Shown here piece by piece: positions 1 to 52,790 of a DNA stretch of 64,000 nucleotides. Position 1 is the stretch's first letter. Each line of letters opens with the position of its first letter. Below the pieces are notes generated by a model, which was not told the DNA's origin, did not search any database, and was given only the letters and a program-made list of their open reading frames with translations. Where the stretch lies: NCBI RefSeq assembly GCF_031769215.1, contig NW_026782205.1, positions 868,001 through 932,000 on the forward strand. The letters run 5' to 3'. Origin of the DNA: Ylistrum balloti. Its lineage: Eukaryota. Both the position numbers and the translations under genes were made by a program.

Positions 1-1485
1 TTGCAGGGGCATTCCACCACAATTACTAGGCTGTCACCTAATTTTTAGACATGCACTTGTAATGTTAATACTCTTCAGACAGAAATTAAAAAAACAAAAA
101 AAAAAAACAATTATTCTGTCACGATTCTGTGGTTGCGGTGTAGCTGGTGCAATGTTACAAATGTGTTTCCCATGTCAGTGACTGTATATGTAAATGCAAA
201 AAGAAGACATTTGAATAACAGATTTTTGTCTTCATTTGAATAATATATTTCTCTTTCATTAAGGTATCACAGATATAGTATATATCTGAAATACATCGAT
301 ATTTGAAAAATGTTGAATGCCTCTTTCTATAGACTGCATTTGAGGAAATTTGTATCTACCCTTGTAAAGGCATCAATATAAGATCAATTTTGTGATGACT
401 TGTAGAGTCTGTAACCTTGAGCATTACAAGGTCATTCTAAACCATGCCAACATATTAACATTATCTTTCTCTAGGTAATTAGACAAAGTATTTATGACAT
501 ATCTGAAACTCTTTTCAGATGTCAAAATCTTTGTATGTGTTAAAGTTTAATTTTAGTTTGCAATAAAACAAAAATAAAAAAATACACCAGAGTCAAGAAT
601 TTGGATTTCAGTTTCTGGCTGGTCTGATGACTTGGGGGTCAGCAGGGAGATATCCCTGTATGTCACATATATTTAAATTTTAGCCAGTTTTACTATACTT
701 TCTTTCAGTTAGACTTAATTTGCATATCATTTGTATAATGAAAATAATAAATATTCACTGACCTAATATAATAATGTCTTTGTTTTATTTGTACATGAAT
801 TATGCATTCTTACAAAAATGCTCCAATATAAGACATAAGTTTACACATTTTAAATTCTTCTTGATTTAAGAAATTTTAGTAAAGTTCATCAAATTGGACT
901 TTTTTAAGAATAATGAAAGATCAGAGGGTGGTGAGTGCCAAGATCATTATGGGAACTCTTGTTAGTATTTTTTTTAAATAGCAATTTTTCTCCATGGGAA
1001 AAAATAGCTAGCAATTTTAACCGTGAAGTATGAATATGTAATTAATGGCAGTGACCACTGTAGTACAGGTATCTTTTATTGATTTAATGAGGTGCTTTAT
1101 GACATCTCTAAGTTTATATCTAGAAAATAAATGTATTATTACCTCATCCTTTGATAAAGTAAAGTATGTTACACAGTAGTTTGTGCTATATGTAATAAAA
1201 GAAATATATTTAAAAGGTGGTGAATAACAAAATTCAGTCCTGCAATCACAAGAGAGCAATTTCTTCAAGGAAGAACTTGGTGGCATTTGAGTGGTCAAAC
1301 AGACCTGAAGTATTGTGCAGAAACCGATTTTCTATTTGTAGCAAGCGATTCTGACCGTACACAAAAGCAAACCCAGGTAAACACTTTATTCAAGGAACAA
1401 TGACAGGTTGTCCATGTAAAACTAGTCCAACATTTTCTTGCATGGTGCTACACTAGCAATGACCTTGCGACCCAGTCCTGAAAAA

Positions 1486-1875
1486 GCAATGCAAAACGAG
1501 CATTTACTGTCTGGAAATAAGCTATGCCAAACGAGCATTTACTGTCTGGAAATAAGCAATGCCAAACGAGCATTTACTGTCTGGAAATAAGCAATGCCAA
1601 ACGAGCATTTACTGTCTGGAAATAAGCTATGCCAAACGAGCATTTACTGTCTGGAAATAAGCAATGCCAAACGAGCATTTACTATCTGGAAATAAGCAAT
1701 GCAAAACGAGCATTTACTGCCTGGAAATAAGCTATGCCAAACGAGCATTTACTGTCTGGAAATAAGCTATGCCAAACGAGCATTTGCTGTCTGGAAATAA
1801 GCTATGCCAAACGAGCATTTGCTGTCTGGAAATAAGCTATGCCAAACGAGCATTGCTGTCTGGAAATAAGCAATG
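1486..1875. repeat. 35-bp tandem minisatellite, about 11 copies
   Basis: Unit GCAATGCCAAACGAGCATTTACTGTCTGGAAATAA repeated head-to-tail with few substitutions. Confidence 0.95.
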
Positions 1876-6758: not shown

Positions 6759-7381
6759 TATAGTGTGATATCTGTATGGTATGTATAGTGTAATATCTGT
6801 ATGGTATGTATAGTGTAAAACGTGTACGGTATGTATAGTGTAATATCTGTATGGTATGTATAGTGTAATATCTGTATGGTATGTATAGTGTAATATATGT
6901 ATGGTATGTATAGTGTAATATCTGTATGGTATGTATAGTGTGATATCTGTATGGTATGTATAGTGTAATATCTGTATGGTATGTATAGTGTAATATCTGT
7001 ATGGTATGTATAGTGTAATACGTGTATGGTATGTATAGTGTAATATCTCTATGGTATACATAGTGTAATACGTGTATGGTATGTATAGTGTAATAGGTGT
7101 ATGGTATGTATAGTGTGATATCTGTATGGTATGTATAGTGTAATACGTGTATGGTATGTATAGTGTGATATCTGTATGGTATGTATAGTGTAATATCTGT
7201 ATGGTATGTATAGTGTAATATCTGTATGGTATGTATAGTGTAATAGGTGTATCTTATGTATAGTGTAATAGGTGTATGGTATGTATAGTGTAATATCTGT
7301 ATGGTATGTATAGTGTAATACGTGTATGGTATATATAGTGTGATATCTGTATGATATGTATAGTGTAATATGTGTATGGTA
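6759..7381. repeat. 25-bp tandem minisatellite, about 25 copies
   Basis: Unit TAGTGTAATATCTGTATGGTATGTA. Explains the repetitive minus-strand ORFs 6735-7533. Confidence 0.96.
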
Positions 7382-7971
7382 AAGACATACCACACTGAAA
7401 AAACCACATTTCTGATATTTAGAGGTGATAGCAAATAAAGATTTCTTCTTGGAAATATTGCAACATAAATAACCCTATACGTGTCATCTTGAATCCTTTT
7501 ATTACCACATTGATGTAACACTTGATCATTCACGAGACCAGAATAGTTTTGACGACTATATTTACGCGAAAAATTGTTGTTGTCTATCTATAAACAAATA
7601 CGTACGCTTCGAAAATCTGGAAATTGTGCGTGAAATTTCAAGAATGGACATCATGCTTCCCAGGAGAGAATGACAAATCCATGGACCGTCTGATTCGTGA
7701 ATATTTCATTAAAACCACCAGTTGACTGACAGACACAAGAGGTTCGATACATGTAAAACTGCATTTCTCATTCGGAATGCATCGGATTGGAAGTCTCATT
7801 AGAATGATAAGTCAAATTTATTGGTCGTAATTTCCGTAGATGAAAATAAATTTTATTGAATAAACACTTTTTACAATATCTTTATATAGCTATTTGTATA
7901 ATCGTAGTCAGATGAATGATTTATATTATATGTCCTATATCAACTCCTACGCTTCAATATTTAGGCCCTTA

Positions 7972-8372
7972 GCATCACTGACGAGTCCTAACAGGACGAA
8001 ACAGCTGTATGATGTAGCATCACTGACGAGTACTAGAAGGACGAAACAGCTGTATGATGTAGCATCACTGAGGAATCCTAACAGGACGAAACAGCTGTAT
8101 GATGTAGCATCACTGATGAGTCCTAGAAGTACGAAACAGCTGTATGATGAAGCATCACTGACGAGTCCTAGAAGGACGAAACAGCTGTATGATGAAGCAT
8201 CACTGACGAGTCCTAGAAGTACGAAACAGCTGTATGATGAAGCATCACTGACGAGTCCTAGAAGGACGAAACAGCTGTATGATGAAGCATCACTGACGAG
8301 TCCTAGAAGGACGAAACAGCTGTATGATGAAGCATCACTGACGAGTCCTAACAGGACGAAACAGCTGTATGA
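7972..8372 (+). ncRNA. Tandem array of nine minimal type I hammerhead ribozymes (45-bp unit)
   Basis: Unit: GCATCA-CTGACGA-GTCCT(aac/aga)AGGAC-GAAA-CAGCTG-TA-TGATG(t/a)a. It contains core CUGANGA, stem II GTCCT/AGGAC, GAAA, palindromic stem III ACAGCTGT, cleavage triplet GUA and stem I CATCA/TGATG. Units start at 7972+45n. Predicted cleavage follows 8009, 8054, 8099, 8144, 8189, 8234, 8279, 8324 and 8369. Stem II is intact in units 1, 5, 7, 8 and 9 and has one mismatch in units 2, 3, 4 and 6. Confidence 0.88.
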
Positions 8373-11300
8373 GTCAGTTTAATTCATTGTTTGGCCCTAC
8401 TGTATCTCAATCTAAATCATTAAAAGGTGCTTTTTCTCTTGTGCTTGTTTTTTTTTTCAATCTTTCGGAAGAAATAAATGTAATCGGAGCACTTCGGCCA
8501 ATTCAGTCAGGTTTCGGAACTTTTCGGCATTGTCCGCGATGAGGCGATTGGTTAGTAGAGCAAACAAAATCATAAGTCCAGTGATATTTGTAAACCCTTT
8601 TTGTGGCCCCACGTAAGTGATAAAACAATACATTGTATCACAGGGGTTACACGTTTGATAATTAGATTACAAATAGTATGTCGAGACTTGTCCAGACAGC
8701 GACAAAGCCGACTATTACTGGAAGACGTATGTGTCTTCTGCCCAGTGGGGGCCTTGCAGAAATGTATCACTCCCAGACAGGCCAACATGCAGACGGTATA
8801 AATAATGAGCGGGAATTTATTTTCTAAAATTTATTGTGATCGTTCTGAAATGCTCGATAGACAGGGCAACTGGCGATGTTGTCAAATGTATTTGGAGATA
8901 AACCATTTAGGTGGAAAGTACATTTTATTTAAAGGACGTCTATTGGAACTCATGGCTCATATAATAAGGCTAAAACACTTGACATGTGTACTTTGAGAAA
9001 TATTTTGTTAGGTAAAGTTTAACTTTAACCGTGAGAATCAATCCAGATTCTTGCATTTCACGACAGCTTAACTGACTATTTGTTCACTAGAACGCCGCCA
9101 TATTTTTTTATTTGGCAGTATTATTGCATAGTGCCGTCAGTGCTTTCCCCTAGCGTACTACAAAGTGAGGAGGTAGTTCTCGGAACAGCCGTTAGTCACG
9201 TCAATAACGAGATTGGTGACAGTTTGAATTGACCAAGTCTAAGTACGTTACATCATATAAATATATGAGACATGAATTTTTCCAACACGTCATGCATGTC
9301 TACAGCGCGTCACGTGTAATTTCCTTATTTAGAAGTAATGTACATATACACGTTTTCGGTAATATTTATTATTACACCTCAGAGTACGTGCACTGCTCCC
9401 TTCCCAGACTCGTCACTTTAAACCAAGATGACGTAATTGTCTACTAGTATCTCATACAAACAATTTTGTATTGTTTAGTTGTAATTCTTATAAAAGTAAA
9501 ACAGCTTTGATAACCTGTTTCATGGCTTTATTTACATTATTGTAAGGAAATTTCAAAATCATCAAAAATGAAATTCTTTTAAGGTATTCAGCCCGTGAAG
9601 CCTTTTAATAGGGACAAAATCAAAAATCAAAATTTTCACCTTATTCATAAAGATCACAATGTATACTCCATTACTGACCATACTTATCCACAAGTTTTTT
9701 TCATCTAACAAAAATTTAAGTCTTTCAATGGTGTCCCATAGCATGCTGGTTGGATACGGTGAAAATATTAGTGTATGCCCAATAAAAAAAACTTAATTTC
9801 AAACAAAAACATGTGTTTTTACATACCATAATAACAGCAATGAATAATAAAATAGCTGCTATTCATATTACATTCATATACAATGTACGATATGCGAAAA
9901 AGTGTTATCTCGGTACCCTCGTTGTCACCTGTAGAAAAGTGACAAAGACACTTTGTAAGGTAAACTGAGTGTGACAAGAGTTTTCAAATGAAAAATCTGT
10001 TTAAATACTTGCTGGCACACCTTCCGCAAATTTCCAAATAACTTTTAGAAACTATTACCACATGTGATTAGATATTTCTAAGTTTTAATACCCCTACCCC
10101 CTTAATTTCGATGACACATTAGATCTCAGGAAAATTGCATACAATAGCATTATAGCCAAACAGATTATAAATACTAAACTCTTTGAAGGCTACAAGTAGA
10201 ATAGCAATAAAAGTTAACTATTTCTGATATTTTCTTACCTTGACCTCTGACCTTGACCCCGATTATGACCACATAATTCATTATATAACAAAAACGAATA
10301 AGAAATCAAGTCCTTTTTACACAAAAAAGTGTTACCATTATAGCTATATAAAAAGCTCATTTTTATCCTACTTTTCAAACAGTTCAACAAGCTTTGGAAT
10401 TACAGAATCCAGAACACACTTTGTAGAAGAGATCCGCGGCTGTCCATTACAGTTCTTTTGCACAAATATTGCTCTCAGACCATCTTCACCATACCTTTGG
10501 AATATTTTTTAGATGTTGGAAGTTTAAGCCAAAGCCTGCAATATTTTCAGCAGTAGCATGTTTTAAAATGCCCGGTGATATTAAAGGATGTAAGGAAGGC
10601 ATTTTTTTTTTTTTTTTGCCTTTTCCCCGCTAAAATTAAGGGCATGAACGTCAACTCTTTGACTTCCGAAAATTCACGATCTATAAAACGTCGGCATTCG
10701 TCGGGATTATAACCGGAAGTGGTCCATTAGGGTGGAAGTACCTTAACATCCAACTTTTCTTGCCGAATCGGGAACTTTCGGCATATTCCGTGTAGGAGAT
10801 GATGTATAACCTGTGATAAGGTAAACAGGAAATCGGATGTGCTCTTATTTTGATTGGTTTAAATTATATTTTTTTCAACATGTCTCTGGCAGCATGCGTT
10901 TTAGTCTCGTTCAATTATACCATAGTTGTCTGCACACGATTCGCCATAGAGAAGTGATCAAGCAGCTTGGTAACACACGATTATGATTGCCAAATTTATC
11001 TGTATTATTTCAGACTTTTGAAATATTTCTATTTCCCTCATGAAAATGTTAAAAACATTTTTTTTTTCTGTCAATATATTTTTATTCAATCGAAGAACCG
11101 GATGTTCCAATTCCGTGCTGCGATTAAAATTCCATCTGCCATGTAGCTGTACAAGCCGATCATGTGCAGGATATTGGTGTCGTTGGGATTTTAAAATCCT
11201 CGTGAATTTCCACACAAAGTATTTCTAAGGGTTCGCCATTATTAACCGTATGTTTCTGAGCGCTTTATAACTTTCAAAATTAAGCGGCCTTAAGATTCGC

Positions 11301-15618: not shown

Positions 15619-17127
15619 CTAACACCCCCAGAGCGAGGACAAGGTGAGGCTGCCATCAGGATGAACGCCGTCTTCGTGTGCACAGAATTTTATTCTATCG
15701 TTTGAGTTATCTGTAGGCCCGATAATGACGCTATGCAGTCGAATTTCATGAGCCGTGTGTGACGTATGCTGGTTGTGTCTTGGTTCCTGATACTTCACGC
15801 GCAGTGACGTCACGTGGCCAACATCGATGTTTATACCTATAACGTGTTTCTCCACCTGGTCATGCCGGAAATACTCGTTACGCGGGGAAAATTTTATTTC
15901 TTCGGATTTCCCGTTTTCACCCATCAGAGTCACTAAAAGTTCTCCATATGAAGTACTTGCGAAATGAGACACGTGTATCTCCACATAGTACTCACGCGCA
16001 CAGAAGGGTTTAGACGAGGCCGTACTGAGGTAAAAGGAACCCCGTTCGAGGGATCGGTCGGCATCGTAGCCCATTACAGGGCAACCACTTGCGGGGCAGC
16101 CCATGCACGCGCCGTTGTCGAACTCAGACGCTGATGAGCACGCATGTCCGTAAAACTTACAGAAGGAATTGACTGATTCAATATATAGGTCAACAGCACG
16201 ATGGTGACTACATGTAACGGAGTTAGTGGCTCCACCTACGGATCCGTGCAGTATGCTGTTTATGGCACTGATTATGGGTTTCTCGTCACATCCGGGCTGA
16301 TGTTGGCCCCTGTTTGGATAAAAATCCATATGGCCGATCGGGCTCAGCAAGCCGTAGCCTGATAAGAGTTTAAACTTTGACCCATCGGTATGGATAATGT
16401 CCACCAAAGTTGCATCAGTTTGGTCAAGTCGTCTATCTGCGCTTTTGTCACGAAAGTCTGGCTCGGCAGGGTCCAGTCCGGAAATACGACCAATCCCTTT
16501 GACCCGGTACCCAATATGTCCAGCGACCTGGGCCCCAAGGCTGTGGCCGATAATGTGTACCCGACCGTAGTTGAGCGATTGGTTTTCGTGAAGATATGTC
16601 AGTACCTTAGCCACTTCCGCCCCAATCAAAAACGAGTTACCCACAGCAAGGTTATATTGCTGATTACTTCCGCTTTTCCAGTCCACCACGATCACGTTGA
16701 AGTCCCCTTTCCGAAGGAGCTCTCTTGTCAGTTCTATGATCCAAGAACTAGTTCCGGAATCCAGATATCCATGTATAATGAATTTAGTGTGTTTGGTGGT
16801 ATTCAACACTGTAGAAAATTGACTAATATCACTGGCGAATTTGTCTACCGCAAAGCTCGTGATCGGACTGTGCGAGTTCGAACGCGTGAACAGTTTCAGA
16901 TGTGTGTTGACAGTGGTTGGTTTTTGCGGAACAGGGACGACTCCATCCGAAACAAAACATCCAAACTCTGGTAGACATTGGGTTTGACTCGAGATATCTT
17001 TCCCGGTCACAGACAAAGCACAAGAAACAAACACTAGCATCAACATGGCCAAAACTGGTCCTGGAAATAGCCGACAACACAACATTGGACTTCGTGCCAA
17101 TATACTGACTAAGTCATCACTACACAT
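15619..17127 (-). CDS. Pancreatic lipase-related protein (triacylglycerol lipase family, alpha/beta-hydrolase plus C-terminal PLAT domain), single coding exon
   Basis: Uninterrupted ORF. Signal peptide MLMLVFVSCALSVTG; N-terminal CLPEFGCF; oxyanion IIHGY; VIVVDW; nucleophile GHSLG (Ser codon 16540-16542); RISGLDPAEP (catalytic Asp); GHMDFYPN; Cys-bounded lid PGC...TCSH (catalytic His); then a PLAT-like beta domain ending in Cys. The track start 17232 is GTG. In-frame ATGs are at 17127, 17085 and 17046 (GCCATG, giving 475 aa). Confidence 0.93.
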   Translation of the reverse strand: MCSDDLVSILARSPMLCCRLFPGPVLAMLMLVFVSCALSVTGKDISSQTQCLPEFGCFVSDGVVPVPQKPTTVNTHLKLFTRSNSHSPITSFAVDKFASDISQFSTVLNTTKHTKFIIHGYLDSGTSSWIIELTRELLRKGDFNVIVVDWKSGSNQQYNLAVGNSFLIGAEVAKVLTYLHENQSLNYGRVHIIGHSLGAQVAGHIGYRVKGIGRISGLDPAEPDFRDKSADRRLDQTDATLVDIIHTDGSKFKLLSGYGLLSPIGHMDFYPNRGQHQPGCDEKPIISAINSILHGSVGGATNSVTCSHHRAVDLYIESVNSFCKFYGHACSSASEFDNGACMGCPASGCPVMGYDADRSLERGSFYLSTASSKPFCAREYYVEIHVSHFASTSYGELLVTLMGENGKSEEIKFSPRNEYFRHDQVEKHVIGINIDVGHVTSLRVKYQEPRHNQHTSHTAHEIRLHSVIIGPTDNSNDRIKFCAHEDGVHPDGSLTLSSLWGC

Positions 17128-17141
17128 TACCAGCTTTGGTA

Positions 17142-17506
17142 CTGAAATGTCCAATCTGTATGTGTTCAGGTATCTTCTGTCGATATCCAATTCTAGTCCT
17201 GAATATTTCTTCCGTAAATAGTAACTTTTCACCGAGCTGAGCGAAATAATGTGTTGTCGTCACTAATGCTATAATTTACACTTTCAGCTAGAGAACTCTA
17301 CACCAGTGTAGCTGGGTACTTTCCATCAATCTCTAATTAAAACTGCTTTCGACTCTTTTTCCAGATCCTCGTCAACAGTTCTGTACAGTTGGTTATTTCC
17401 GGGTGTTCTTTTATTAATTATGCTCCATACTGTTGCCAGCCGTCTCTAACTATTTCCGGGTGTCATTTAAACACAATATTTCCCTGAACTTAAGAATAAA
17501 ACTTAC
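17142..17506 (-). other. Putative 5'-UTR intron of the lipase gene
   Basis: Minus-strand donor GAA|GTAAGT at 17506 and acceptor CATTTCAG| at 17142, 14 nt before the first ATG. Inferred from splice motifs only. Confidence 0.4.
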
Positions 17507-21788: not shown

Positions 21789-23835
21789 TACCAAAGGTGA
21801 TGTAAATATGCTGTTAGAGTGAGCATCACCCTGATCAAATACTTACCTACCATAGGTGATGTAAATATGCTGTTAGAGTGAGCATCACCCTGATCAAATC
21901 CTTACCTACCATAGGTGATGTAAATATGCTGTTAGAGTGAGCATCACTCACCCTGATCAAATACTTACCTACCATAGGTGATGTAAATTTGTTGTTAGAG
22001 TGAGTATCACTCACCCTGATCAAATACTTACCTACCATAGGTGATGTAAATATGTTGTTAGAGTGGGCATCACCCTGATCAAATACTTACCTTCCATAGG
22101 TGATGTAAATATATTGTTAGAGTGAGTATCACTCACCCTGATCAAATACTTACCTACCATAGGTGATGTAAATATGTTGTTAGAGTGAGCATCACTCACT
22201 CTGATCAAATACTTACCTACCATAGGTGATGTAAATATGTTGTTAGAGTGAGCATCACCCTGATCAAATACTTACCTACCATAGGTGATGTAAATATGTT
22301 GTTAGAATGAGTATCACTCACCCTGATCAAATACTTACCTACCATAGGTGACGTAAATTTGTTGTTAGAGTGAGTATCACTCACCCTGATCAAATACTTA
22401 CCTACCATAGGTGATGTAAATATATTGTAAGAGTGAGTATCACTCACCCTGATCAAATACTTACCTACCATAGGTGATGTAAATATGTTGTTAGAGTGAG
22501 TATCACTCACCCTGATCAAATACTTACCTACCATAGGTGATGTAAATATGTTGTTAGAGTGAGATCACTCACCCTGATCAAATACTTATACTTACCTTCC
22601 ATAGGTGATGTAAATATATTGTTAGAGTGAGTATCACTCACCCTGATCAAATACTTACCTACCATAGGTGATGTAAATATGTTGTTAGAGTGAGTATCAC
22701 TCACCCTGATCAAATACTTACCTACCATAGGTGATGTAAATTTGTTGTTAGAGTGGGCATCACCCTGATCAAATACTTACCTACCATAGGTGATGTAAAT
22801 ATGTTGTTAGAGTGAGTATCACTCACCCTGATCAAATACTTACCTACCATAGGTGATGTAAATATGTTGTTAGAGTGAGCATCACTCACCCTGATAAAAT
22901 ACTTACCTACCATAGGTGATGTAAATATGTTGTTAGAGTTAGTATCACTCACCCTGATCAAATACTTACCTACCATAGGTGATGTAAATATGTTGTTAGA
23001 GTGAGTATCACCCTGATCAAATCCTTACCTACCATAGGTGATGTAAATATGTTGTTAGAGTGAGTATCACTCTACCTGATCAAATACTTACCTACCATAG
23101 GTGATGTAAATATGTTGTTAGAGTGAGCATCACCCTGATCAAATACTTACCTACCATAGGTGATGTAAATATGTTGTTAGAGTGAGTATCACTCACCCTG
23201 ATCAAATACTTACATACCATAGGTGATGTAAATATGTTGTGAGTATCACTCACCCTGATCAAATACTTACCTACCATAGGTGATGTAAATATGTTGTAAG
23301 AGTGAGCATCACTCACCCTGATCAAATACTTACCTACCATAGGTGATGTAAATATGTTGTTAGAGTGAGTATCACTCACCCTGATCAAATACTTACCTAC
23401 CATAGGTGATGTAAATATATTGTAAGAGTGAGTATCACTCACCCTGATCAAATACTTACCTACCATAGGTGATGTAAATTTGTTGTTAGAGTGAGTATCA
23501 CTCACCCTGATCAAATACTTACCTACCATAGGTGATGTAAATTTGTTGTTAGAGTGGGCATCACCCTGATCAAATACTTACCTACCATAGGTGATGTAAA
23601 TATGTTGTTAGAGTGAGTATCACTCACCCTGATCAAATACTTACTTACCATAGGTGATGTAAATATGCTGTTAGAGTGAGCATCACTCACTCTAATCAAA
23701 TACTTACCTACCATAGGTGATGTAAATATGTTGTTAGAGTGAGCATCACCCTGATCAAATCCTTACCTACCATAGGTGATGTAAATATGTTGTTAGAGTG
23801 AGCATCACCCTGATCAAATACTACCATAGGTGATG
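21789..23835. repeat. 63-bp (variant 59-bp) tandem satellite, about 33 copies
   Basis: Unit TACCATAGGTGATGTAAATATGTTGTTAGAGTGAGTATCACTCACCCTGATCAAATACTTACC. Explains the MVGKYLIRVSDTHSNNIFTSP ORFs. Confidence 0.97.
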
Positions 23836-23917
23836 CTCAGAAAACAGTGGTCCAGGATCCCTAGCGGAGATATTATGGAAAATACGTTCTTTTTGTTTAG
23901 TTATAGGAATAATGCTT

Positions 23918-24352
23918 ATAACAAATGTTACTGTTTCTGTCAGGACGTTGATATATCAGATGCCACAATTTCTGACAGGACGTGTATACAACAAATGTTA
24001 CTATTTCTGTCAAAAGGGCCCTATAACAAATGTTACTATTTCTGTCTGGACGTTGATATAACAAATGTTATTTTTAACAGGACGTTGATAAATCAGATGT
24101 CACAATTTCTGTCAGGACGTGTATACAACAAATGTTACTATTTCTGTCAAAAGGGCCCTATAACAAATGTTACTATTTCTGTCAGGACGTTGATATAACA
24201 AATGTTACTATTTTTAACAGGACGTTGATAAATCAGATGTCACAATTTCTGTCAGGACGTGTATACAACAAATGTTACTATTTCTGTCAAAAGGGCCCTA
24301 TAACAAATGTTACTATTTCTGTCAGGACGTGGATATACCAAATGTTACTTTT
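23918..24352. repeat. About 35-bp subunit repeat with a ~137-140-bp higher-order period
   Basis: AACAAATGTTACTATTTCTGTC subunits. The block GTATACAACAAATG...AAAAGGGCCC recurs at about 23984, 24121 and 24261. Confidence 0.85.
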
Positions 24353-24394
24353 TCTATCAAATTGTTCCTTGATTTCTATTTCTGCCAGAGTGTT

Positions 24395-25460
24395 AATAAG
24401 ACAAGTGTTACTTTATTTGTCAGGGCGTTAATAAGACAAATGTTCCTATATTTGTCTGGGCGTTAATAAGACAAGTGTTCCTACATTTGTCTGGTCGTTA
24501 ATAAGACAAGTGTTCCTATACTTTTCTGGTCGTTAATAAGACAAATGTTCCTATATTTGTCAGGGCGTTAATAAGACAAATGTTCCTATATTTGTCTGGG
24601 CGTTAATAAGACAAGTGTTCCTATATTTGTCTGGTCGTTAATAAGACAAGTGTTCCTATACTTTTCTGGTCGTTAATAAGACAAATGTTCCTATATTTGT
24701 CAGGGCGTTAATAAGACAAGTGTTGCTATATTTGTCTGGGCGTTAATAAGACAAGTGTTCCTATATTTGCCTGGGCGTTAATAAGACAAGTGTTCCTATA
24801 TTTGTCAGGGCGTTAATCAGACAAGTTTTACTTTATTTGTCAGGTCGTTAATCAGACAAGTGTTACTTTATTTGTCAGGGCGTTAATAAGACAAGTGTTC
24901 CTATATTTGCCTGGGCGTTAATAAGACAAGTGTTCCTATATTTGTCAGGGCGTTAATCAGACAAGTTTTACTTTATTTGTCAGGTCGTTAATCAGACAAG
25001 TGTTACTTTATTTGTCAGGGCGTTAATAAGACAAGTGTTGCTATATTTGTCTGGTCGTTAATAAGACAAGTGTTCCTATATTTGTCAGGTCGCTAATAAG
25101 ACAATTGTTCCTATATTTGTCTGGTCGTTAATAATGTTCCTATATTTGTCTGGTCGTTAATAAGACAAGTGTTCCTATATTTGTCTGGTCGTTAATAAGA
25201 CAAGTGTTCCTATATTTGTCAGGTCGTTTATAAGACAAGTGTTCCTATATTTGTCAGGGCGTTAATAAGACAAGTGTTCCTATATTTGTCTGGTCGTCAA
25301 TAAGACAAGTGTTCCTATATTTGTCTGTTCGTTAATAATGTTCCTATGTTTGTCAGGGCGTTAATTAGAAAAGTGTTCCTATATTTGTCTGGTCGTTAAT
25401 AATGTTCCTATATTTGTCAGGGCGTTAATCAGAAAAGTGTTCCTATATTTATTAGGGCGT
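24395..25460. repeat. 35-bp tandem minisatellite, about 30 copies
   Basis: Unit ATAAGACAAGTGTTCCTATATTTGTC(A/T)GG(G/T)CGTTA. Confidence 0.95.
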
Positions 25461-33574: not shown

Positions 33575-34436
33575 ACTTAACTCGATCTGTAACACTGGAA
33601 CTCGATCTGTAACACTGTAACTCGATATGTTACGCTTAACTCGATCTGTAACACTGGAACTCGATCTGTAACACTGAAACTCGATATATAATACTGAAAC
33701 TCGAACTGTAACACTGTAAATGTAACACTGTAACTCGATCTGTAAACACTGTAACTCGACCTGTTACACTGAAACTCGACCTGTTACGCTTAACTCGATC
33801 TGTAACACTGAAACTCGATATATAATACTGAAACTCGAACTGTAACACTGTAACTGTAACACTGTAACTCGATCTGTAAACACTGTAACTCGACCTGTTA
33901 CACTGAAACTCGACCTGTTACGCTTAACTCGATCTGTAACACTGAAACTCGATATATAATACTGAAACTCGAACTGTAACACTGTAATTCGACCTGTAAC
34001 ACTGTAACTCGATCTGTAAACACTGTAACTCAACCTGTAACATTGTAACTCGACCTGTTACACTGAAACTCGACCTGTTACGCTTAACTCGATCTGTAAC
34101 ACTGAAACTCGATATATAATACTGAAACTCGACATGTAACACTGTAACTCGACATTTAACACTGTAACTCAACATGTAACACTGAAACTCGAACTGTAAC
34201 ACTGTAACTCGACCTGTTACACTGAAACTCGACCTGTTACACTTAACTCGATCTGTAACACTGAAACTCGATATATGATACTGAAACACGAACTGTAACA
34301 CTGTAACTCGACCTGTAACAGTGAAACTCGATCTGTAACACTGTAACCGTCCTGTAACACTGTAATTCGACCTGTTACACTGAACCTCGATCTGTAACAC
34401 TGTAACCGTCCTGTAACACTGCCACACTGAAACACT
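33575..34436. repeat. 19-20-bp monomer satellite with a 135-160-bp higher-order period
   Basis: Monomer AACTCGA(T/C)CTGT(A/T)ACACTG(T/A). The marker GTTAC(G/A)CTTAACTCG recurs at about 33629, 33783, 33917, 34077 and 34236. Lies in intron 5. Confidence 0.93.
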
Positions 34437-37498: not shown

Positions 37499-38730
37499 CT
37501 GCAATGTACAATGACGTCGTAACAACATTAAACCTATTTTCGTAGTTAGAAAAGTCAACGATAAGGCGACATGTCGAGTTCAAATTTCTGAATTGTACAT
37601 TTATACACGTTAATTTGGCACTTAAAGATGATACATTTATATGTACCTTGTAATCTTTGGGAGCAACATTATTGTAGACGAGAGGAAAATACTTACTGAT
37701 ATATCGTCTAAAAGTTCATGGAATTGAAAATATCGATCACTCATAAAAAAGACATATAGAAATAATTGAAATACACGTAATGGGTATGTCTATTATTTAA
37801 ACGGTTTGTTTTAATGAAGTGCAAAAATATGAAATACTAATTGGTTTATTATGAATCTCTGCGATATGAATGCTAGTATATCTCAATCACACTGTTTAAA
37901 AACCGTCTGGGCACAAACAAAATATAATCAGCGACTCCAAAACACACATGGGTGAAAATTGCCAGCTTTCTGTCAACTCGAATACGGCAACTGTTTGTTA
38001 AAACGTTTGTGACTTTTTGATAGAGCGATGCAGCGCGATGCTTGGCGAGTGTAAACCTTACTACGATAAAACAACAATAAATCCCGTTTTATTTTCAGAT
38101 TGTCTTCGGATTGTAGCTACATCTGGATGCCTTTCGTGCCAGTGGCCGTATTTCGATGTCACCGACGTACGATGATAAACCGCACGTCTATCTGTACTGG
38201 TCTATAGGATCCGACATCAAAGAGCCAGCGCTACCATCAAACACATCAAACTACCTTCAGTTGTATGTTTCAAATCTGTTTTTGTAAAGTCAGTTTCAAT
38301 TTAGACAGTTAAGAATAAAGAGGAAATGGACATGTTTTATACATGTTATATATATATTTATACGTATCTTCCACAGAGTAGAAACCAAGGACACCTCAAG
38401 CTACAGACTAGCGTTACACAAATTACATTGTACATATACCTTAATAACAAAACATAGACAACAACATCCCACTCAAAATACTAATCCTACAAAACAAAAC
38501 ATTTCCCCAAAACACTTATTCTATATTAAAAACAATAACCCAACCCTAAACATTAACCCAACATAAAAACATTAACTTTGCCCACAAACACTACCCCATA
38601 TGTAACAGTAAACATCCTCAAAACTACTAATCCTACAAAAGAAAACGTTAAGCACATATAACAAAAAACCTACCAACAAAAGACTAACCCTACAAACACT
38701 AACCCGACCAATAAACACTAACCCTACATA

Positions 38731-39210
38731 ACCCTACCAATAAACACTAACCCTACATATCAAATCGATAACCCTAACAACAAACACTAACCCTACATAT
38801 CAAATCGATAACCCTAACAACAAACACTAACCCTACATATCAAATCGATAACCCTAACAACAAACACTAACCCTACATATCAAATCGATAACCCTAACAA
38901 CAAACACTAACCCTACATATCAAATCGATAACCCTAACAACAAACACTAACCCTACATATCAAATCGATAACCCTAACAACAAACACTAACCCTACATAT
39001 CAAATCGATAACCCTAACAACAAACAGTAACCCTACATATCAAATCGATAACCCTAACGACAAACAGTAACCCTACATATCAAATCGATAACCCTAACAA
39101 CAAACAGTAACCCTACATATCAAATCGATAACCCTCCCAATAAACAGTAACCCTACAAATCAAATCAATGACCCTACCAACAATCACTAACCCTACATAT
39201 CAAAATTCAC
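38731..39210. repeat. 40-bp tandem minisatellite containing telomere-like TAACCCTA motifs, 12 copies
   Basis: Unit ACCCTAACAACAAACACTAACCCTACATATCAAATCGATA, embedded in a degenerate C/A-rich zone of about 38450-39340. Confidence 0.95.
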
Positions 39211-42601: not shown

Positions 42602-43446
42602 CTGCAAAACACAAACAAAACTGGTATGGACTTTTGAAGAGGTCAATACATGGTTTGAAGAAATACAGAACTTGATATTAACCTATACGTTTTATCCATA
42701 AACAGGATACCATGGTAGTTTAAAATATCAGCTTATTATTGTTCAAATAAGACATAATATCACAGAATCAATGGTAACATCCACCACTTTGTGTGGATAT
42801 TTTTTATAATGACCAATGGTACTTTAGCAAAAATATCTCTGACAAGAAAGAGAAAAAATATGTTTCCAAATTGAACAGTCAGGAAGACAATTTAATCAAC
42901 TGCATAATTGAAAACGTTGTTGTAAACAAACGTTATTTGATGCGAGCAGAAAACATTAAAATTGCGTTGAATAGTCAATTTAGAGTGATTGACAGCATTC
43001 CTATGTTACTAAACATGAAATCATTTGATTATGGTGTCAAAGACTCCTAAAATCAATCGTCTAATGTTGCTACAGAAACATTATCGTCATATTAGGGACT
43101 TTGAGAATATGACGAAAAAAAAATATAAGATTGTTTTTCCATTGTTTACAATAACATAATTCGATTGACAGTGTTAAATGTTTTCACAAACATAAACTGG
43201 TTCTTGTGTTGTTGGTGGTCACTACAAAATACATAAAGGGTGTTACACCAAATTCCATCGAGACAGTTTGTAGTCTCCAAAGTTTGCCTTAACATGCACA
43301 GTACGTCATTCGAATAGTGGATACACATATACTTTACGTTCTACTAGAATTATCAGATATTTGAAAATCCAGAAATGGGTTACATTATGAAGCTAATGCA
43401 GTTCCCATCGAGATCTTTCGTTCAATCATTGATTTGCTTCAATCGC

Positions 43447-43541
43447 CTCCTACGTTTCAAAATCAAAGTCCTTTGCATCACCAAGAAGGACGAAACAGCT
43501 GTATGACGCCGTTCAATTCATTATTTGACTTAATTGTATCT
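43447..43541 (+). mobile_element. Single-copy relative of the hammerhead-array element, with the catalytic core deleted
   Basis: CTCCTACGTTTCAAAAT...GCATCAC|CAAGAAGGACGAAACAGCTGTATGA...GTTCAATTCATTATTTGAC...TGTATCT aligns with both flanks and one unit of 7944-8407. The 9 nt TGACGAGTC are missing. Confidence 0.8.
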
Positions 43542-44646
43542 AATAATAATTTTTTATTCAAGGTGATATTTACTTGAAATACAGCCCTAACTGATTATTT
43601 GAGCAGGAACAGACCTGCTGACGTTTAACACGTCCATGCTCACTCGAGTACCGACTGTAACATGTACAGAGTAACGCTATCATAACTCATCCCGTATATA
43701 ACACCGATACAGATGTTGGTTATGATCCGTGAACAAGCTAACACAGTCATGTGGAGGCTACATTTCATCATCTGTGCTATTTCGGTGAGATGGATGCATC
43801 CAAATAACGGTACCGTCAAGTTTGGTAAATGAATAATTTCTACGTGGCAGGTAATATAAGTGTTATCGATGTAAACCGTATTCACGCTAAAGTCTGGCCG
43901 AGTCTGAATATTAAACTGATTTGAACCTTTTTAAGGTTGGCCTTTTCAGTGGTATTGCCAATGGACAGTCTTAATTGGGTCTAGATTTTGTTAAGGTATA
44001 TGCAAACATTCGACAATTTTGGTATTCAAAATGTTCTTTCTTTTGAAAATTACCCGGCATGCCTCAGTGGTCGTATGTGCAGTAACAGGACGTTCTAATA
44101 TGCCAATGTATAGTTTACTTTAATTACTTTTAATGCCAATTTATTCCCACAACACTGTTCATCTTGAAAAACCAAAATTAGTACTGTCTATAATACCATA
44201 CAGATAAGGATACTGCAGTAAATCCCACAGAATTACTGACAATGACAGGAAGAAATATGAACTGGCAACACAGCCTTATCCATGTAAGACAACCATGCTC
44301 TCTACATATACTTAAATCTGATGTTTATAGTCCCCTCTCGTGAGAAATGTGGCGTCCTCCATCACAAAGAAAATTCTTATAATATTATAGTCGCGAATAC
44401 ACCGATAAAAGAACATGATTATTTTGCTATTCAACAAACTTTTTGTAATCGTGTCACATGTGCGACGGTGCCATAAGGAAGCTCCACCGCTCGATAGCCG
44501 TAGCTTGATGAAAAGATTACGATATTCAAGATAAAATACATAATAAAATGTTATAGGCGTTTAAATTCACTAAGACGGATGTTCCTGCAAATTTTAAAAC
44601 TTGGTCTTTGTTTTCAGATACCTCCAGGTGTGAAACTCGGACTTAC

Positions 44647-47227: not shown

Positions 47228-48117
47228 CGTATGTATGAGGCTACATCCTGAAGTAATGGAGTACAGGATTGTAACCATGTATGTGTGAGAGCTACATCCT
47301 GAAGTAATGGAGTACAGGATTGTAACCATGTATGTGTGAAAGCTACATCCTGAAGTAATGGAGCACAGGATTGTAACCATGTATGTGTGAGGGTACATCC
47401 TGAAGTAATGAAGTACAGGATTGTAACCAGCCATGTATGTGTGAGGGTACATCCTGAAGTAATGGAGCACATGATTGTAACCATGTATGTGTGAGGCTAC
47501 ATCCTGAAGTAATGGAATACAGGATGGTAACCAGCCATGTATGTGTGAGGCTACATCCTGAAGTAATGGAGCACAGGATTTTAACCATGTATGTGTGAGG
47601 CTACATCCTGAAGTAATGGAGTACAGGATGGTAACCAGCCATGTATGTGTGAGAGCTACATCCTGAAGTAATGGAGTACAGGATTGTAACCAGCCATGTA
47701 TGTGTGAGGCTACATCCTGAAGTAATGGAGTACAGGATTTTAACCATGTATGTGTGAGGCTACATCCTGAAGTAATGGAGTACAGGATGGTAACCAGCCA
47801 TGTATGTGTGAGGGTACATCCTGAAGTAATGGAGTACAGGATTGTAACCAGCCATGTATGTGTGAGGCTACATCCTGAAGTAATGGAGTACAGGATTGTA
47901 ACCATGTATGTGTGAGGCTACATCCTGAAGTAATGGAGTACAGGATGGTTACCAGCCATGTATGTGTGAGGCTACATCCTGAAGTAATGGAGTACAGGAT
48001 TGTAACCAGCCATGTATGTGTGAGGCTACATCCTGAAGTAATGAAATACAGGATTGTAACCAGCCATGTATGTGTGAGGCTACATCCTGAAGTAATGGAG
48101 TACAGGATTGTAACCTG
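47228..48117. repeat. 50/54-bp tandem minisatellite, about 17 copies
   Basis: Unit ATGTATGTGTGAGGCTACATCCTGAAGTAATGGAGTACAGGATTGTAACC(AGCC). Lies in intron 1. Confidence 0.96.
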
Positions 48118-51100
48118 TCATGAGATGTACATATATCCTTTAAATTCTGAAAAAAAAGATTAATGCTGTTTCACTAATCGCAATGGATTGGACATTCAAA
48201 GTGGCGTAGCAAATGTTTTTTAGGAGTGTATGCTTTCAAAAGAACGTCCAGGGGTGAAGCCCCGGTGGGAGGGTCTGGGGGCGAAGCCCTCCTGAAGCTG
48301 ACGTGTATTAGCTGATTAGAAATACCTTTTCTATTTACACCAACACATTTTATTCAACATAAATGACAAAATGCAGTAATTTATTTGTTAACAATAATCG
48401 CTGTTTCCAGCGTATGGTTACGCATACAAGCATTATCGCTACGTCACTGATTTGTCTATTTCCAATACGGCTGAGGATTCATTCCCAATTGGTGCTGATT
48501 CATTTGGGATAACGGGGGCGATCAATACAAGATTATCAAACGTGTTTCTTAATTGTAGAACAAAACATTTAATTTCAGTCTTAATTCTACACCATTTTAA
48601 AATCTAACCTCTAATTCTCTGGGTCTTAAATTTCGATTTCACTATTGATTCAAAACAATACAATACAATCATCGATCGTCCACCGTGCTTGGTTAGCCCG
48701 TTATAAACAGCCAGATTCTGACCTTTCTCGCTTTAAGCTGTAAACCGTTTTAAAACAGTTGGTTTTAAGTGTTTAGTCAAAACTTAAGCACGAACTTCAA
48801 GTTGTGGTGACGATTCTTACACTCTGTCATGTCGACACGTGTCACAAAGATGGATGGCGACCCCACCTCGCATCGTCTTGGCAACAAATTAGACCAGGCT
48901 TAATCGAGTGTTAATTAAGCTCGAGATACACCCACGAAATACCATTGTCTAACCTTTAGAATGCAGTTGTATAATTCATCATGTAAACAAAGCGTGTCAA
49001 GGGAGCATCGTCGGTATCGTCATACGGGTCAAGGTCACCAGTTAAAAATAGATACTAAGAGCCGAAAACCGTAAACACTCGTGGATTTCACAAAGATAAA
49101 TCACTCTGACGTAAAACCACTTGACAAAGCCACGGACAGCAATTATCATTTTCGAGGTAAAATAATGAATTCCCATTATGAAACGGGACACTATAAATAT
49201 GTGATCTCTATGGCTACTGATGCAAACCCAACAACAATTCCTGCAGTTCCATCAGAGAAACATGACCTAATCCGCTATTTATCATTGATATGTCTGAAAA
49301 TATGTCCTTGTTGTGTAAGTGATCACAGACAGTAGCGCATCATACCAGACGACCTGTCATACCTGTTATTTTAGTACGCTGTTACAGACATTGAGTCCAC
49401 TGACCTACTAATGTGCATGGAGACCTATACGACATATCGATCGGACGATCAGAAGTTGGACACAGTATTCGTTACCAGACTCCGCTACCACGAGTATATA
49501 ATGTACTGATTAGACAAAAGACATTTACAATAAATAACAGGAAATCCACGCAAATCAGCAGGCACAAACAAGACTGATGTATACATTTAACCGTATTAAC
49601 GTTTTCAAGCATTTTCTTTCCTCGGGACAAAAATTTTGATTTTGCACTTAAAAGTTAGTAGGAATCCGATTTTCTATTTTAGTACAGTATCTTTGACTCT
49701 TAGTTTAAAGAGTACTTATTTTCAAAAGTAATAAGTCTTAGAACCTAAGTATCTGTGCTCACGCGCACTTTTAATTTACAGATTCATTGAATAAAGTTAA
49801 AAGTTTCTTCGGTAGACGTGGACAAAATGACTGCATGCAAGAAGGACGTAGCAGAGGACAAACAACGCGCCCAGTGTTATCACTTCAGACCATCCACTGA
49901 TTGTAGGACATTTTCCTGTAAAATCACCGTGTAACGAAAGTCTGCTGCTCCCTGGTAATACTATACATGGCAGCGGTGGAAGTTCTGCCGCTAAACTCAG
50001 CACCATGTATATCACCCGATACGTATGATCTTTATAATACATAAACTCTCTTACTCCAACAAAATGTACATTTCACAAGAACTATGACAGGTGGAAATGA
50101 CTAAAAATGAAATATCACCCTCGCGATAACTAATCTCTATGATAAAAAATTCAATTTCGTCTGAATGGGTTATTTTGATCCAGTGCCCTGTCGTGTCGAT
50201 AGTCTCGGCTTAGTGTTGCCTGTCGCGCGTGCATGTTACCGCCATCTTTTACAGGTTACATATGTTTAGAACCTTCCAAAGACACCATTACTCGTAAACG
50301 CTCCCGCGGGATGACTTTTACATTCTGAGGTTTGATGGAATTAAGATAGTGCGCGTTATATGGCGCGGAAAAAGTAGATTCCATCCTTCTACACTACATA
50401 GATCATGTCTGTGTTTGACATGCCCAATCTCAAACGTTGTCAAAAGCATACGTCTCTCTGACAGGACGTCCGCTCTAATCCACAACCTCTTCCTCACTTC
50501 TGTACATAATACAATACCAAGTCGATAGTTATTGGCAATAAATTTTGTTAAACATCCTCAGGAAAAAAAAAAGATTTTCTGAAAGCGATTTTAAAAAAGA
50601 GGACCCCGTCTTGGAATTACTTCACGAGAAATGGCACACCAAGTGCCCTTTCGACCATGTAATATGAAATACTAATTTGGGCACATATCATGCATGGTAC
50701 TATTACTATTATGTAAGTCAAGTGACCAAAATCATTTTTCAATTTATAATTGATGTAAAATATAAAATTTCGTAATAATGAATAATCGATTAGATTTCTT
50801 ACTTTTTACAAGTGTGCTTACTGATGACATGAAATCAAACTGCATTGTTGAAATTTTATGTTACTTTCAAAACTTAATTGCTTCAAAAATATCTCTTGAT
50901 ACATTTTTGCTGATGACCAATATTAACCAGAAGACATACAGTCTTACAATTCTAAGAACCAATCGATCAATTTCTTTTACAAAACCAATCTCAAATCAAA
51001 CTATGAGGTCAGTTCATGATTTCTAACCTTTGACCTCTGAGAAGTAAATTGACTTCTGGCGATCCCATGTTCTTGATTATGTCAATTTCATACATTACTG

Positions 51101-52389: not shown

Positions 52390-52790
52390 GACATAGATAT
52401 TGTTTGTTTGTTTGTCTGTTGTTCCTATCAAACAAATGATTTGTTTGATTGTTTGTTCCTATCAGACACAGGATTTGTTTGTTTGTCTGTTGTTCCTATC
52501 AGACATAGAATTTGTTTGTTTGTTCCTATCAAACAAAGGATTTGTTTCTTTGTTCCTATCAGACATAGAATTTGTTTGTTTGTTCCTATCAGACATAGAA
52601 TTTGTTTGTTTGTTCCTATCAGACACAGGATTTGTTTGTTTGTTCCTATCAGACACAGGATTTGTTTGTTTGTTCCTATCAGAAACAGGATTTATTTGTT
52701 TGTTTGTTCCTATCAGACACAGGATTTGTTTGTTTGTTTTTCCTATCAGACATAGAATTTGTTTGCTTGTCTGTTGTTCCTATCAACCAA
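52390..52790. repeat. About 30-bp tandem minisatellite
   Basis: Unit TTTGTTTGTTTGTTCCTATCAGACA(T/C)AG(A/G)A. Confidence 0.93.

What the first reader, a model, noticed from the sequence alone, without database searches (positions are those of the whole stretch)
7972..8372. A satellite whose 45-bp monomer is one whole hammerhead ribozyme: possible ultra-minimal retrozyme
Seen: nine tandem 45-bp units, each with every hammerhead element in order (CATCA / CUGANGA / 5-bp stem II / GAAA / ACAGCTGT / GUA cleavage site / TGATG). Only about 3 nt per unit are not ribozyme. Known: minimal type I hammerheads with short palindromic stem III occur in Penelope-like element repeats and newt satellite 2 and cleave as dimers. 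Metazoan non-LTR retrozymes are hammerhead-bounded tandem monomers, usually about 150-400 nt. Inference: a plus-strand transcript would be cut into 45-nt monomers (TGATG...CTGTA). If ligated, each would be a closed hammerhead circle with triloops on stems I and II. Adjacent units could supply each other's 8-bp palindromic stem III in cis. The array may come from rolling-circle reverse transcription of such a circle, or from DNA slippage at a single ribozyme. The 162-aa ORF over it is a by-product.
Basis: partly seen in the sequence, partly recalled or inferred. Interest (0 to 1): 0.9.

Follow-up and report, generated by a model that had tools for sequence, protein, structure and literature searches.

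The report
Hammerhead ribozyme minisatellite inside a retroelement
Nine back-to-back 45-base copies of a small self-cutting RNA motif sit here in a scallop genome, but they are the expanded ribozyme module of a common ~400-base mobile element and not a tiny self-copying RNA of their own.

Summary
Window 7971-8372 is 8.9 copies of a 45-bp unit, and every unit has the hammerhead core. Rfam calls unit 1 a type I hammerhead above threshold. Across unit junctions the array also reads as a near-threshold type III hammerhead.

The "ultra-minimal retrozyme" reading is not supported. The array is the internal ribozyme module of a 5'-truncated copy (7933-8464) of a ~399-nt non-coding element present in thousands of copies in this scallop genome. 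Most copies sampled by flank alone carry one ribozyme, and a minority carry arrays.
- None of 42 arrays lacks both host flanks. 5' starts vary and 3' ends are fixed.
- Core positions decay as fast as loops (5.9% against 7.2% mismatch; 531 units).
- Ribozyme-killing variants have spread through whole arrays.
- A ribozyme-free part of the same element has also formed a 47-bp array.

So the units multiply as DNA inside a retrozyme-like or Penelope-associated element, which carries them around.

This window's array is comparatively well kept: 9/9 cores intact and 4/9 units fully intact. If transcribed it could cut itself, but nothing here shows that it is transcribed or that it cuts. This scan has already reported the same family at other places in this genome. 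It is a new variant of a known kind, of moderate interest.

The parts
7933..7970 (+). Remnant of the host element's 5' part (monomer positions ~232-269); this copy is strongly 5'-truncated
   Evidence: nhmmer with a profile built from natural copies: window 7933-8017 matches monomer positions 232-316; conserved motif ending ...TTTAGGCCCTT directly before the first unit, as in other loci
7971..8372 (+). Array of 9 hammerhead units of 45 bp, starting at 7971, 8016, 8061, 8106, 8151, 8196, 8241, 8286 and 8331. The predicted cleavage site follows the A of GUA at 8009 and then every 45 nt up to 8369
   Evidence: TRF, core pattern 9/9, Rfam, per-unit status
7972..8015 (+). Unit 1, the only unit above Rfam's gathering score as a type I hammerhead
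   Evidence: RF00163, 36.0 bits against 34
8227..8277 (+). Best junction hammerhead (units 6|7). Helix III is formed by the two neighbouring palindromes, helix I is the hairpin UGAUG-AAG-CAUCA, and the core and helix II come from unit 7
   Evidence: RF00008, 47.4 bits against 48.5; the MFE structure is the complete three-way hammerhead, -15.8 kcal/mol, 46% of the ensemble, z -2.9
8373..8464 (+). 3' tail of the host element (monomer positions ~316-398), ending at the family's fixed 3' end (...CAATCTT)
   Evidence: nhmmer hits 8331-8446 and 8331-8472; alignment of 20 downstream flanks
43269..43576 (+). Second, decayed copy of the same host element (monomer positions 35-379), with a single dead hammerhead whose core is partly deleted
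   Evidence: nhmmer E 1.5e-45; sequence printed

Best explanation
The array is a minisatellite grown from the 45-bp hammerhead module of a ~399-nt non-coding, non-autonomous retroelement of the animal retrozyme / Penelope-associated kind. The hammerhead lies at monomer positions ~270-315. Shown: the basic element has one ribozyme. Genomic copies are more-than-unit-length pieces with a fixed 3' end and a variable 5' start, the mark of copying a multimeric or circular RNA from its 3' end. The window's copy keeps only 38 nt of the 5' part, nine ribozyme units and the full tail. Inferred: one or a few tandem duplications of the module arose in master copies, since all arrays share one register and 50 of 53 share the junction base T. 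Array-bearing elements were then spread by the host element's own retrotransposition, and some insertions were truncated inside the array. Each array then gained and lost units as DNA, by unequal crossing-over or replication slippage, while decaying neutrally. If the plus strand is transcribed, neighbouring units would pair through their palindromes into junction (double) hammerheads. In this well-kept array they could cut after GUA at junctions 4|5, 6|7, 7|8 and 8|9, releasing 45- and 90-nt pieces. These would be by-products, not replicons.
For: Dispersal and host element: at least 151 matches on about 45 contigs in the same register; 2517 exact junction matches, reversed control 0; flanks conserved between loci. 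Basic state is one ribozyme: of the 29 best loci found with the 5' part alone (2904 candidate places), about 22 have a single module, and arrays occur only in L070, L081, L082 and L085. Monomer 399 nt; 12 loci have a partial monomer starting at positions 153-359 directly before a full one, and L080 has two full monomers. Flank census of 42 arrays: 31 have both flanks, 5 the tail only, 5 the 5' part only, 1 lies at a locus edge, and none lacks both. 5' starts range 2-259 and tail ends 391-398. No selection on the ribozyme: among 531 array units the mismatch rate is core 5.9%, N7 4.5%, helix I 6.4%, helix II 6.7%, loop II 7.2%, helix III 6.3%. 53.7% of units have an intact core, against 54% expected from (1-0.059)^10. 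DNA-level growth: 37 array-private majority variants, several lethal to the ribozyme (L031 GAAA to GAGA in 93% of 15 units; L022 GAAA to GGAA in 72% of 29; L047, L085, L023). Identity is 0.909 within arrays and 0.881 between them. In the window, position 45 is A in 56% of units against 10% elsewhere, and lag-2 identity exceeds lag-1. Control: a 47-bp, 7-copy array of ribozyme-free monomer positions 1-36 in L066. The window itself holds more than 15 unrelated minisatellites. Folding: junction hammerhead is the MFE; the lone unit misfolds.
Against: Transcription, cleavage and mobility are all untested. The shared register and T junction in nearly all arrays are not what many independent random slippage events would give, so the founding step could be an RNA or reverse-transcription event rather than DNA duplication. 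The tree of 5' parts is star-like and cannot say whether array-bearing copies share ancestry (7 changes for 8 rows, as in shuffles, but well-supported branches force only 2). The link to Penelope-like elements is by analogy with the literature. GIY-YIG ORFs exist in the genome, but I could not fetch them to compare their ends. Units were collected by similarity to one reference unit (11 or fewer mismatches), which trims the most decayed ones.
Confidence: 0.75

Rival explanations
1. Arrays are made at the RNA or reverse-transcription step of the host element's cycle. The reverse transcriptase slips or switches template at the ribozyme, for example between RNAs or units held together by the palindromic helix III. 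Unit number would then change with each retrotransposition, not afterwards in the chromosome.
For: Same 45-nt register and same junction base T in 50 of 53 arrays. Arrays occur in many independent insertions with different 5' truncation points, five of them truncated inside the array. Divergence within arrays (9%) is not far below that between arrays (12%), so much of the growth is old.
Against: Private variants, including dead cores, have spread within single arrays. The window array has a 90-bp higher-order pattern. A ribozyme-free segment of the element also forms a tandem array (L066). All of these show that DNA-level turnover occurs. Nothing here requires an RNA step beyond ordinary transmission of an existing array.
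Confidence: 0.12
2. The 45-nt unit is an ultra-minimal retrozyme: transcripts are cut into 45-nt monomers, circularised, and copied by rolling-circle reverse transcription into new arrays.
For: Every unit is a whole ribozyme. The unit is amplified at thousands of places. Junction hammerheads fold well. A 2026 preprint lists retrozyme families with consensus lengths down to 51 bp.
Against: None of 42 arrays lacks both host flanks, and all enter and leave the host element in the same register. Arrays made almost wholly of dead units exist. Core positions are no better kept than loops. The roughly 45-nt product is almost unstructured (-3.1 kcal/mol, z +1.3). A 45-nt circle has one palindrome copy and cannot form helix III in cis. 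Complete self-cleavage would trim an array to one unit per RNA passage, not build it up (inference).
Confidence: 0.06
3. The arrays are kept by the host or by the element for a function, such as a multi-site RNA-processing cassette or a source of small RNAs.
For: In this window all nine cores and all eight neighbour palindrome pairs are intact. Arrays are frequent in the genome.
Against: Genome-wide, only 36.5% of units are fully intact, and decay is uniform across core, stems and loops. The arrays are on both strands in equal numbers (1252 and 1265). The window's copy lies between other minisatellites, about 7 kb from the nearest ORF I found.
Confidence: 0.04

Closest known systems
Animal non-LTR retrozymes (Cervera & de la Pena 2020, PMC7229834), e.g. 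the mussel repeats of ~350-390 bp
   Same: A type I hammerhead with a short palindromic helix III. A non-coding, low-GC monomer of about 400 nt (host element 399 nt, 35% GC). Head-to-tail partial multimers, thousands of copies, a bivalve host, and a monomer RNA more structured than shuffles (z -2.55).
   Different: Here the ribozyme module itself has been amplified inside the monomer into a second, nested 45-bp periodicity. Described retrozyme RNAs are about 170-400 nt. No expression or circular RNA data exist for this element.
Minimal hammerheads of Penelope-like elements that cleave as dimers (Cervera & de la Pena 2014, PMC4209133; Lunse et al. 2017 as summarised in PMC6765202)
   Same: Helix III has no real loop and is completed by a second copy. 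Tandem arrangement is needed for the active fold. The motif is associated with retroelements showing 5' truncation, partial tandems and terminal 'tails' (PMC8557442).
   Different: PLE min-HHRs are described mostly as single motifs in pLTRs about 3 kb apart, with a long helix II (7-8 bp). Here helix II is 4-5 bp and helix I 5-6 bp, as in canonical metazoan type I motifs. The copies are contiguous with about 3 nt between ribozymes. No RT/GIY-YIG ORF was found next to any copy examined.
Short retrozyme families from the TRF + rnabob survey of Li, Clavereau & Pollet 2026 (bioRxiv 10.64898/2026.07.22.740005)
   Same: Tandem repeats with a complete hammerhead in consecutive units. Consensus lengths are reported down to 51 bp. 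The proposed origin is PLE terminal sequence followed by local amplification through unequal crossover. The window array meets their working definition.
   Different: That survey covers vertebrates and a few outgroups, not molluscs. It does not describe arrays nested in a longer retrozyme monomer. Our 45-bp unit is shorter than their minimum.
Double-hammerhead of newt satellite 2 and avocado sunblotch viroid (Forster et al. 1988, cited in PMC4209133)
   Same: Two adjacent ribozyme copies pair through helix III to form active sites. The 'type III' junction reading here is that fold seen from inside.
   Different: In newt satellite 2 and in viroids the two copies are about 250-330 nt apart; here they are adjacent.

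Membership tests
Hammerhead ribozyme, type I (Rfam RF00163) | Conserved core CUGANGA ... GAAA and a cleavable NUH site | tested here: met
   9/9 units have the core and GUA
Hammerhead ribozyme, type I (Rfam RF00163) | Score at or above the curated gathering threshold | tested here: met
   Unit 1 scores 36.0 bits against 34. The other units score 23-28 bits, below threshold
Hammerhead ribozyme, type I (Rfam RF00163) | Three helices around the core in one molecule | tested here: inconclusive
   Helices I and II form within a unit. Helix III forms only with a neighbouring unit. A lone unit misfolds (core CUG pairs with CAG), while the 51-nt junction folds correctly
Hammerhead ribozyme, type I (Rfam RF00163) | Self-cleavage | not testable with these tools
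   Needs in vitro transcription or RNA end mapping
Non-LTR retrozyme (Cervera & de la Pena 2020): the 45-bp unit as the retrozyme | [quoted passage not shown] | tested here: not met
   The unit is 45 nt. The roughly 45-nt product folds at -3.1 kcal/mol, z +1.3. None of 42 arrays is free of host flanks
Non-LTR retrozyme (Cervera & de la Pena 2020): the 399-nt host element as the retrozyme | Non-coding, low-GC monomer of about 170-400 nt with a type I hammerhead, in head-to-tail copies | tested here: met
   Monomer 399 nt with the hammerhead at 270-315; partial + full and full + full tandems; GC 35%; no tRNA-like head
Non-LTR retrozyme (Cervera & de la Pena 2020): the 399-nt host element as the retrozyme | Expressed as linear and circular monomer RNA | not testable with these tools
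   No transcriptome access. The monomer RNA fold has z -2.55, which is only suggestive
Penelope-like element pLTR / PLE-derived non-autonomous element | Sequence shared with the terminal region of an RT + GIY-YIG element in the same genome | not tested
Penelope-like element pLTR / PLE-derived non-autonomous element | Insertion signature: frequent 5' truncation, partial tandems, fixed 3' end, short terminal 'tail' | tested here: met
   5' starts 2-259 and 153-359; tail ends 391-398; a 40-95-nt copy of the 3' end directly before many full monomers. The features are as listed in PMC8557442
Working definition of an 'active non-LTR retrozyme' in Li et al. 2026 | A TRF-detected tandem repeat with at least two consecutive units holding a complete hammerhead motif with MFE below -5 kcal/mol | tested here: met
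   Units 7 and 8 are consecutive and fully intact. Unit MFE is -11.5 kcal/mol. Definition read

The most novel reading that the evidence does not exclude
Transcripts of well-preserved arrays like this one are cut by their junction hammerheads into 45-nt, or ligated 90-nt circular, RNAs. These would accumulate in scallop cells and either act as small RNAs or feed back as templates during reverse transcription of the host element. That would make it the smallest ribozyme-bounded RNA unit known in animals.
Probability: 0.06. Interest if true: 0.85.

Novelty: new variant of a known kind. Interest (0 to 1): 0.35.

Why it matters
It shows how far a ribozyme-bearing repeat can shrink: a natural DNA array with only about 3 nt between successive hammerheads, laid out so that each neighbour completes the next one's fold. 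It also offers a genome-wide natural experiment. Thousands of such units decay at the same rate in catalytic and non-catalytic positions, and dead units keep multiplying. So a satellite can look like a chain of ribozymes and still be ordinary repeat DNA riding on a retrozyme-like element. That is a caution for pipelines that call any tandem repeat with intact hammerheads an 'active retrozyme'. For ribozyme biology, the better-preserved arrays are ready-made constructs for testing cis double-hammerhead cleavage.

Tried and rejected
1. My first unit-finder (fuzzy regex) split arrays and under-counted units. I replaced it with a Hamming scan, and the numbers are not used.
2. I first read the window's upstream 250 bp as a diverged full 5' part (alignment). 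The profile search shows only 38 nt belong to the element, so that reading was dropped.
3. tRNA-derived SINE head: ARAGORN and Rfam found nothing in four natural copies.
4. One clade of array-bearing copies: the tree is too star-like to decide.
5. A link to an autonomous Penelope-like element: GIY-YIG hits were found, but loci could no longer be fetched, so this was not tested.
6. Relatives outside this genome: the junction pattern has no match in metagenome or viral contigs. These collections hold essentially no animal DNA, so this is uninformative.
7. The bacterial promoter/terminator scan around the array is irrelevant to a eukaryote and was ignored.
8. Lunse et al. 2017 (PMC5785218) is not held. 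I relied on its summary in PMC6765202.
9. The supplement of PMC7229834 gave no detail on 'minimal HHR copies in tandem' beyond consensus figures.
10. The fold of the '45-nt product' was one base out of register (8191-8235 instead of 8190-8234) and used unit 6, which has a helix II mismatch. It is only indicative.

Full report
**1. What is there**

Window 7971-8372 is a clean tandem array: period 45 bp, 8.9 copies, 94% matches, no indels. Every unit contains CTGANGA, then 9-30 nt, then CGAAAC; 0.07 such matches are expected by chance in the window.

Rfam's type I hammerhead model (RF00163) scores unit 1 (7972-8015) at 36.0 bits against a gathering score of 34. With the threshold relaxed, other units score 23-28 bits. 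The array also matches the type III model (RF00008) across unit junctions, at 47.4 bits for 8227-8277 and 42 bits for 8092-8142, just under its threshold of 48.5.

Unit status:
- All nine catalytic cores are intact, and all eight pairs of neighbouring ACAGCUGU palindromes are perfectly complementary.
- Units 1, 5, 7 and 8 are flawless.
- Units 2, 4 and 6 have one helix II mismatch.
- Unit 3 has lost the G10.1-C11.1 pair.
- Unit 9 has a damaged helix I strand where the array meets the flank.

The 162-aa ORF (7894-8382, TTG start) is just a frame staying open through a 15-codon repeat.

**2. How the RNA would fold**

- A lone 45-nt unit in type I register does not adopt the active fold. Its MFE (-11.5 kcal/mol) pairs core CUG with CAG, and there is no helix III.
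- The 51-nt stretch from one palindrome to the next (8227-8277) folds as a complete three-way hammerhead: -15.8 kcal/mol, 46% of the ensemble, z -2.9. Helix III is the two palindromes, helix I is the hairpin UGAUG-AAG-CAUCA formed across the unit boundary, and helix II and the core come from the downstream unit.
- Two- and three-unit RNAs fold as nested versions of the same thing.

This is the classical double-hammerhead (Forster 1988, as cited in PMC4209133) with the two copies adjacent. A stretch close to the 45-nt cleavage product is almost unstructured (-3.1 kcal/mol, z +1.3); that fold was one base out of register and used a unit with a helix II mismatch, so it is only indicative. A 45-nt circle would carry a single palindrome copy, so it could not form helix III within itself. 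The smallest closed form able to fold as hammerheads would be a 90-nt dimer (inference).

**3. The array is part of a larger mobile element**

The same unit, in the same register, is found on dozens of contigs of this 648-Mb genome. An exact 33-nt pattern spanning a unit junction occurs 2517 times, on both strands equally, with 0 hits for the reversed control.

The flanks of the arrays are conserved between loci. About 300 bp upstream ends in ...TTTAGGCCCTT, and about 85-100 bp downstream ends in ...TGTACAATCTT.

I used a natural copy of the 5' part alone as a query. It found 2904 candidate places. Of the 29 best loci, about 22 carry a single hammerhead module. Only L070, L081, L082 and L085 carry arrays, of 5 to 26 units.

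A profile built from natural copies defines a 399-nt monomer with the hammerhead at positions ~270-315. Typical genomic copies are a full monomer directly preceded by a partial one. The partial starts at positions 153, 155, 302, 312, 320, 324, 327, 344, 345, 347, 354 or 359 and always runs to position 398. L080 has two full monomers. This fixed 3' end with a variable 5' start in more-than-unit-length copies is what copying a multimeric or circular RNA from its 3' end would give. It matches the insertion features listed for Penelope-like elements in PMC8557442 (5' truncation, partial tandems, short terminal 'tail').

Other properties of the monomer:
- GC content is 35%.
- It has no tRNA-like head.
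- A natural site-to-site monomer RNA folds better than shuffles (z -2.55).

A lipase ORF in the window (15619-17232, minus strand) is 81% identical to *Pecten maximus* and 76% to *Mizuhopecten yessoensis*, so the genome is a scallop's. In another pteriomorph bivalve, the mussel, the described retrozyme repeats are about 350-390 bp with about 5000 copies (PMC7229834). The host element here looks like the scallop counterpart.

In the window, the copy runs from 7933 to about 8464. It has 38 nt of 5' part (monomer 232-269), nine units and the whole tail. A second, decayed copy with a dead ribozyme lies at 43269-43576.

**4. Do the 45-bp units multiply as RNA replicons or as DNA?**

Five tests bear on this.

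a. Free arrays. Of 42 arrays, 31 have both host flanks, 5 have only the tail (as expected if an insertion was truncated inside the array), 5 have only the 5' part, 1 runs off the locus, and none lacks both. 5' starts scatter from 2 to 259, and tail ends cluster at 391-398. So units travel only as cargo of the host element.

b. Selection. Among 531 array units the mismatch rate is 5.9% in the ten core positions, 4.5% at the free N7 position, 6.4% in helix I, 6.7% in helix II, 7.2% in loop II and 6.3% in helix III. 53.7% of units have an intact core, which equals the neutral expectation (1-0.059)^10 = 54%. Only 36.5% of units are fully intact.

c. Dead units multiply. 37 array-private majority variants were found. 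Several kill the ribozyme yet occupy most of an array:
- L031: GAAA to GAGA in 93% of 15 units.
- L022: GAAA to GGAA in 72% of 29 units.
- L047: last core A to T in 83% of units.
- L085: CUGA to CUAA in 80% of units.
- L023: cleavage-site A to G in 60% of units.

Growth therefore does not need self-cleavage.

d. Local homogenisation. Identity is 0.909 within arrays against 0.881 between them. In the window, the junction base A is found in 56% of units against 10% elsewhere, and lag-2 identity exceeds lag-1, pointing to a 90-bp duplication of units 4-5 / 6-7.

e. Control. In L066 a ribozyme-free segment of the same element (monomer positions 1-36) has formed a 7-copy, 47-bp array. The 64-kb window alone holds more than 15 unrelated minisatellites of 19-63 bp. 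Minisatellite formation is a general habit of this genome.

**5. What remains open**

All arrays use exactly the same 45-bp register, and the junction base is T in the majority of units in 50 of 53 arrays. Many independent random slippage events would not give this. Either one or a few founding duplications occurred in master copies and were inherited through retrotransposition, or the founding step is a reproducible event during reverse transcription.

The five insertions truncated inside an array, and the modest gap between within- and between-array divergence, suggest arrays were often already present in the RNA template. The tree of 5' parts cannot settle ancestry. Array-bearing copies are scattered (7 changes for 8 rows; shuffled mean 7.3), but well-supported branches force only 2 changes.

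One inference is worth noting. Efficient self-cleavage would trim an array to one unit on each passage through RNA. Inherited arrays therefore imply inefficient cleavage, in line with the low activity reported for dimer-dependent minimal hammerheads (PMC4209133).

**6. Comparison with what is known**

- The ribozyme is a canonical metazoan type I motif (helix I 5-6 bp, helix II 4-5 bp) with the short palindromic helix III that works only in pairs (PMC4209133; PMC6765202).
- The host element fits the animal non-LTR retrozyme description (PMC7229834), apart from expression, which I cannot test.
- Li, Clavereau and Pollet (2026 preprint) list retrozyme families with consensus lengths from 51 to 972 bp. 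They propose that PLE terminal sequences give rise to retrozymes that then amplify locally by unequal crossover.
- By their working definition the window array would be called an active retrozyme. The evidence above says that label would be wrong as a statement of mechanism.
- I found no description of a ribozyme-only array nested inside a longer retrozyme monomer, nor any report from scallops. The held library is incomplete, and Lunse et al. 2017 could not be read.

**7. Verdict**

The feature is a hammerhead-module minisatellite inside a 5'-truncated copy of a ~399-nt retrozyme-like element, one of thousands in this scallop genome. It is better preserved than most, but shows no sign of selection or independent replication.

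Earlier notes of this scan on other pieces of the same genome reached similar conclusions. I re-derived the host element, the decay pattern and the DNA-level growth independently here. I also added the monomer coordinates, the flank census, the L066 control and the shared-junction argument. Novelty: new variant of a known kind. Interest: moderate.

Noticed in passing
window 15619-17232 (-): An intronless 537-aa ORF encoding a pancreatic-type lipase (Pfam PF00151, E 2.7e-85). It is 81% identical to a Pecten maximus protein and 76% to a Mizuhopecten yessoensis one, which places the genome in the scallops (Pectinidae).
   Followed up: partly
window 1480-1875, 6759-7381, 21789-25450, 33578-34421, 38728-39204, 47229-48122, 52411-52770, 54934-55497, 60310-60733: The 64-kb window holds more than 15 unrelated minisatellites with units of 19-63 bp, up to 2 kb long. 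Tandem expansion of short segments is pervasive here, independent of ribozymes.
   Followed up: no
window 38700-39204: A 40-bp minisatellite (about 12 copies) whose unit contains AACCCTAAC-like pieces, the reverse complement of the TTAGGG telomeric repeat. Some endonuclease-lacking Penelope-like elements carry such stretches beside hammerheads (PMC8557442). No link was tested.
   Followed up: no
window 43269-43576 (+): A second, older copy of the same ~399-nt host element (monomer positions 35-379), with a single hammerhead whose core is partly deleted.
   Followed up: partly
L066:1777-2094 (-): Seven tandem copies, period 47 bp, of monomer positions 1-36 of the host element, a part without any ribozyme. 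It is a useful control showing that array growth in this element is not tied to the hammerhead.
   Followed up: partly
G000 contigs C422:240415-261997 and C129:50248-67783 (not fetched): GIY-YIG endonuclease matches inside 755-aa open frames, repeated every ~5.3 kb on C422 and about 17 kb apart on C129. These are candidate autonomous Penelope-like elements that might mobilise the host element.
   Followed up: no
G000 contigs C19:664675-665769, C26:440203-441837, C4:581664-582371: Much longer arrays of the same 45-bp unit (over 1 kb), with many exact junction matches. On C4, C21 and C23, arrays on opposite strands lie within a few kb of each other.
   Followed up: no
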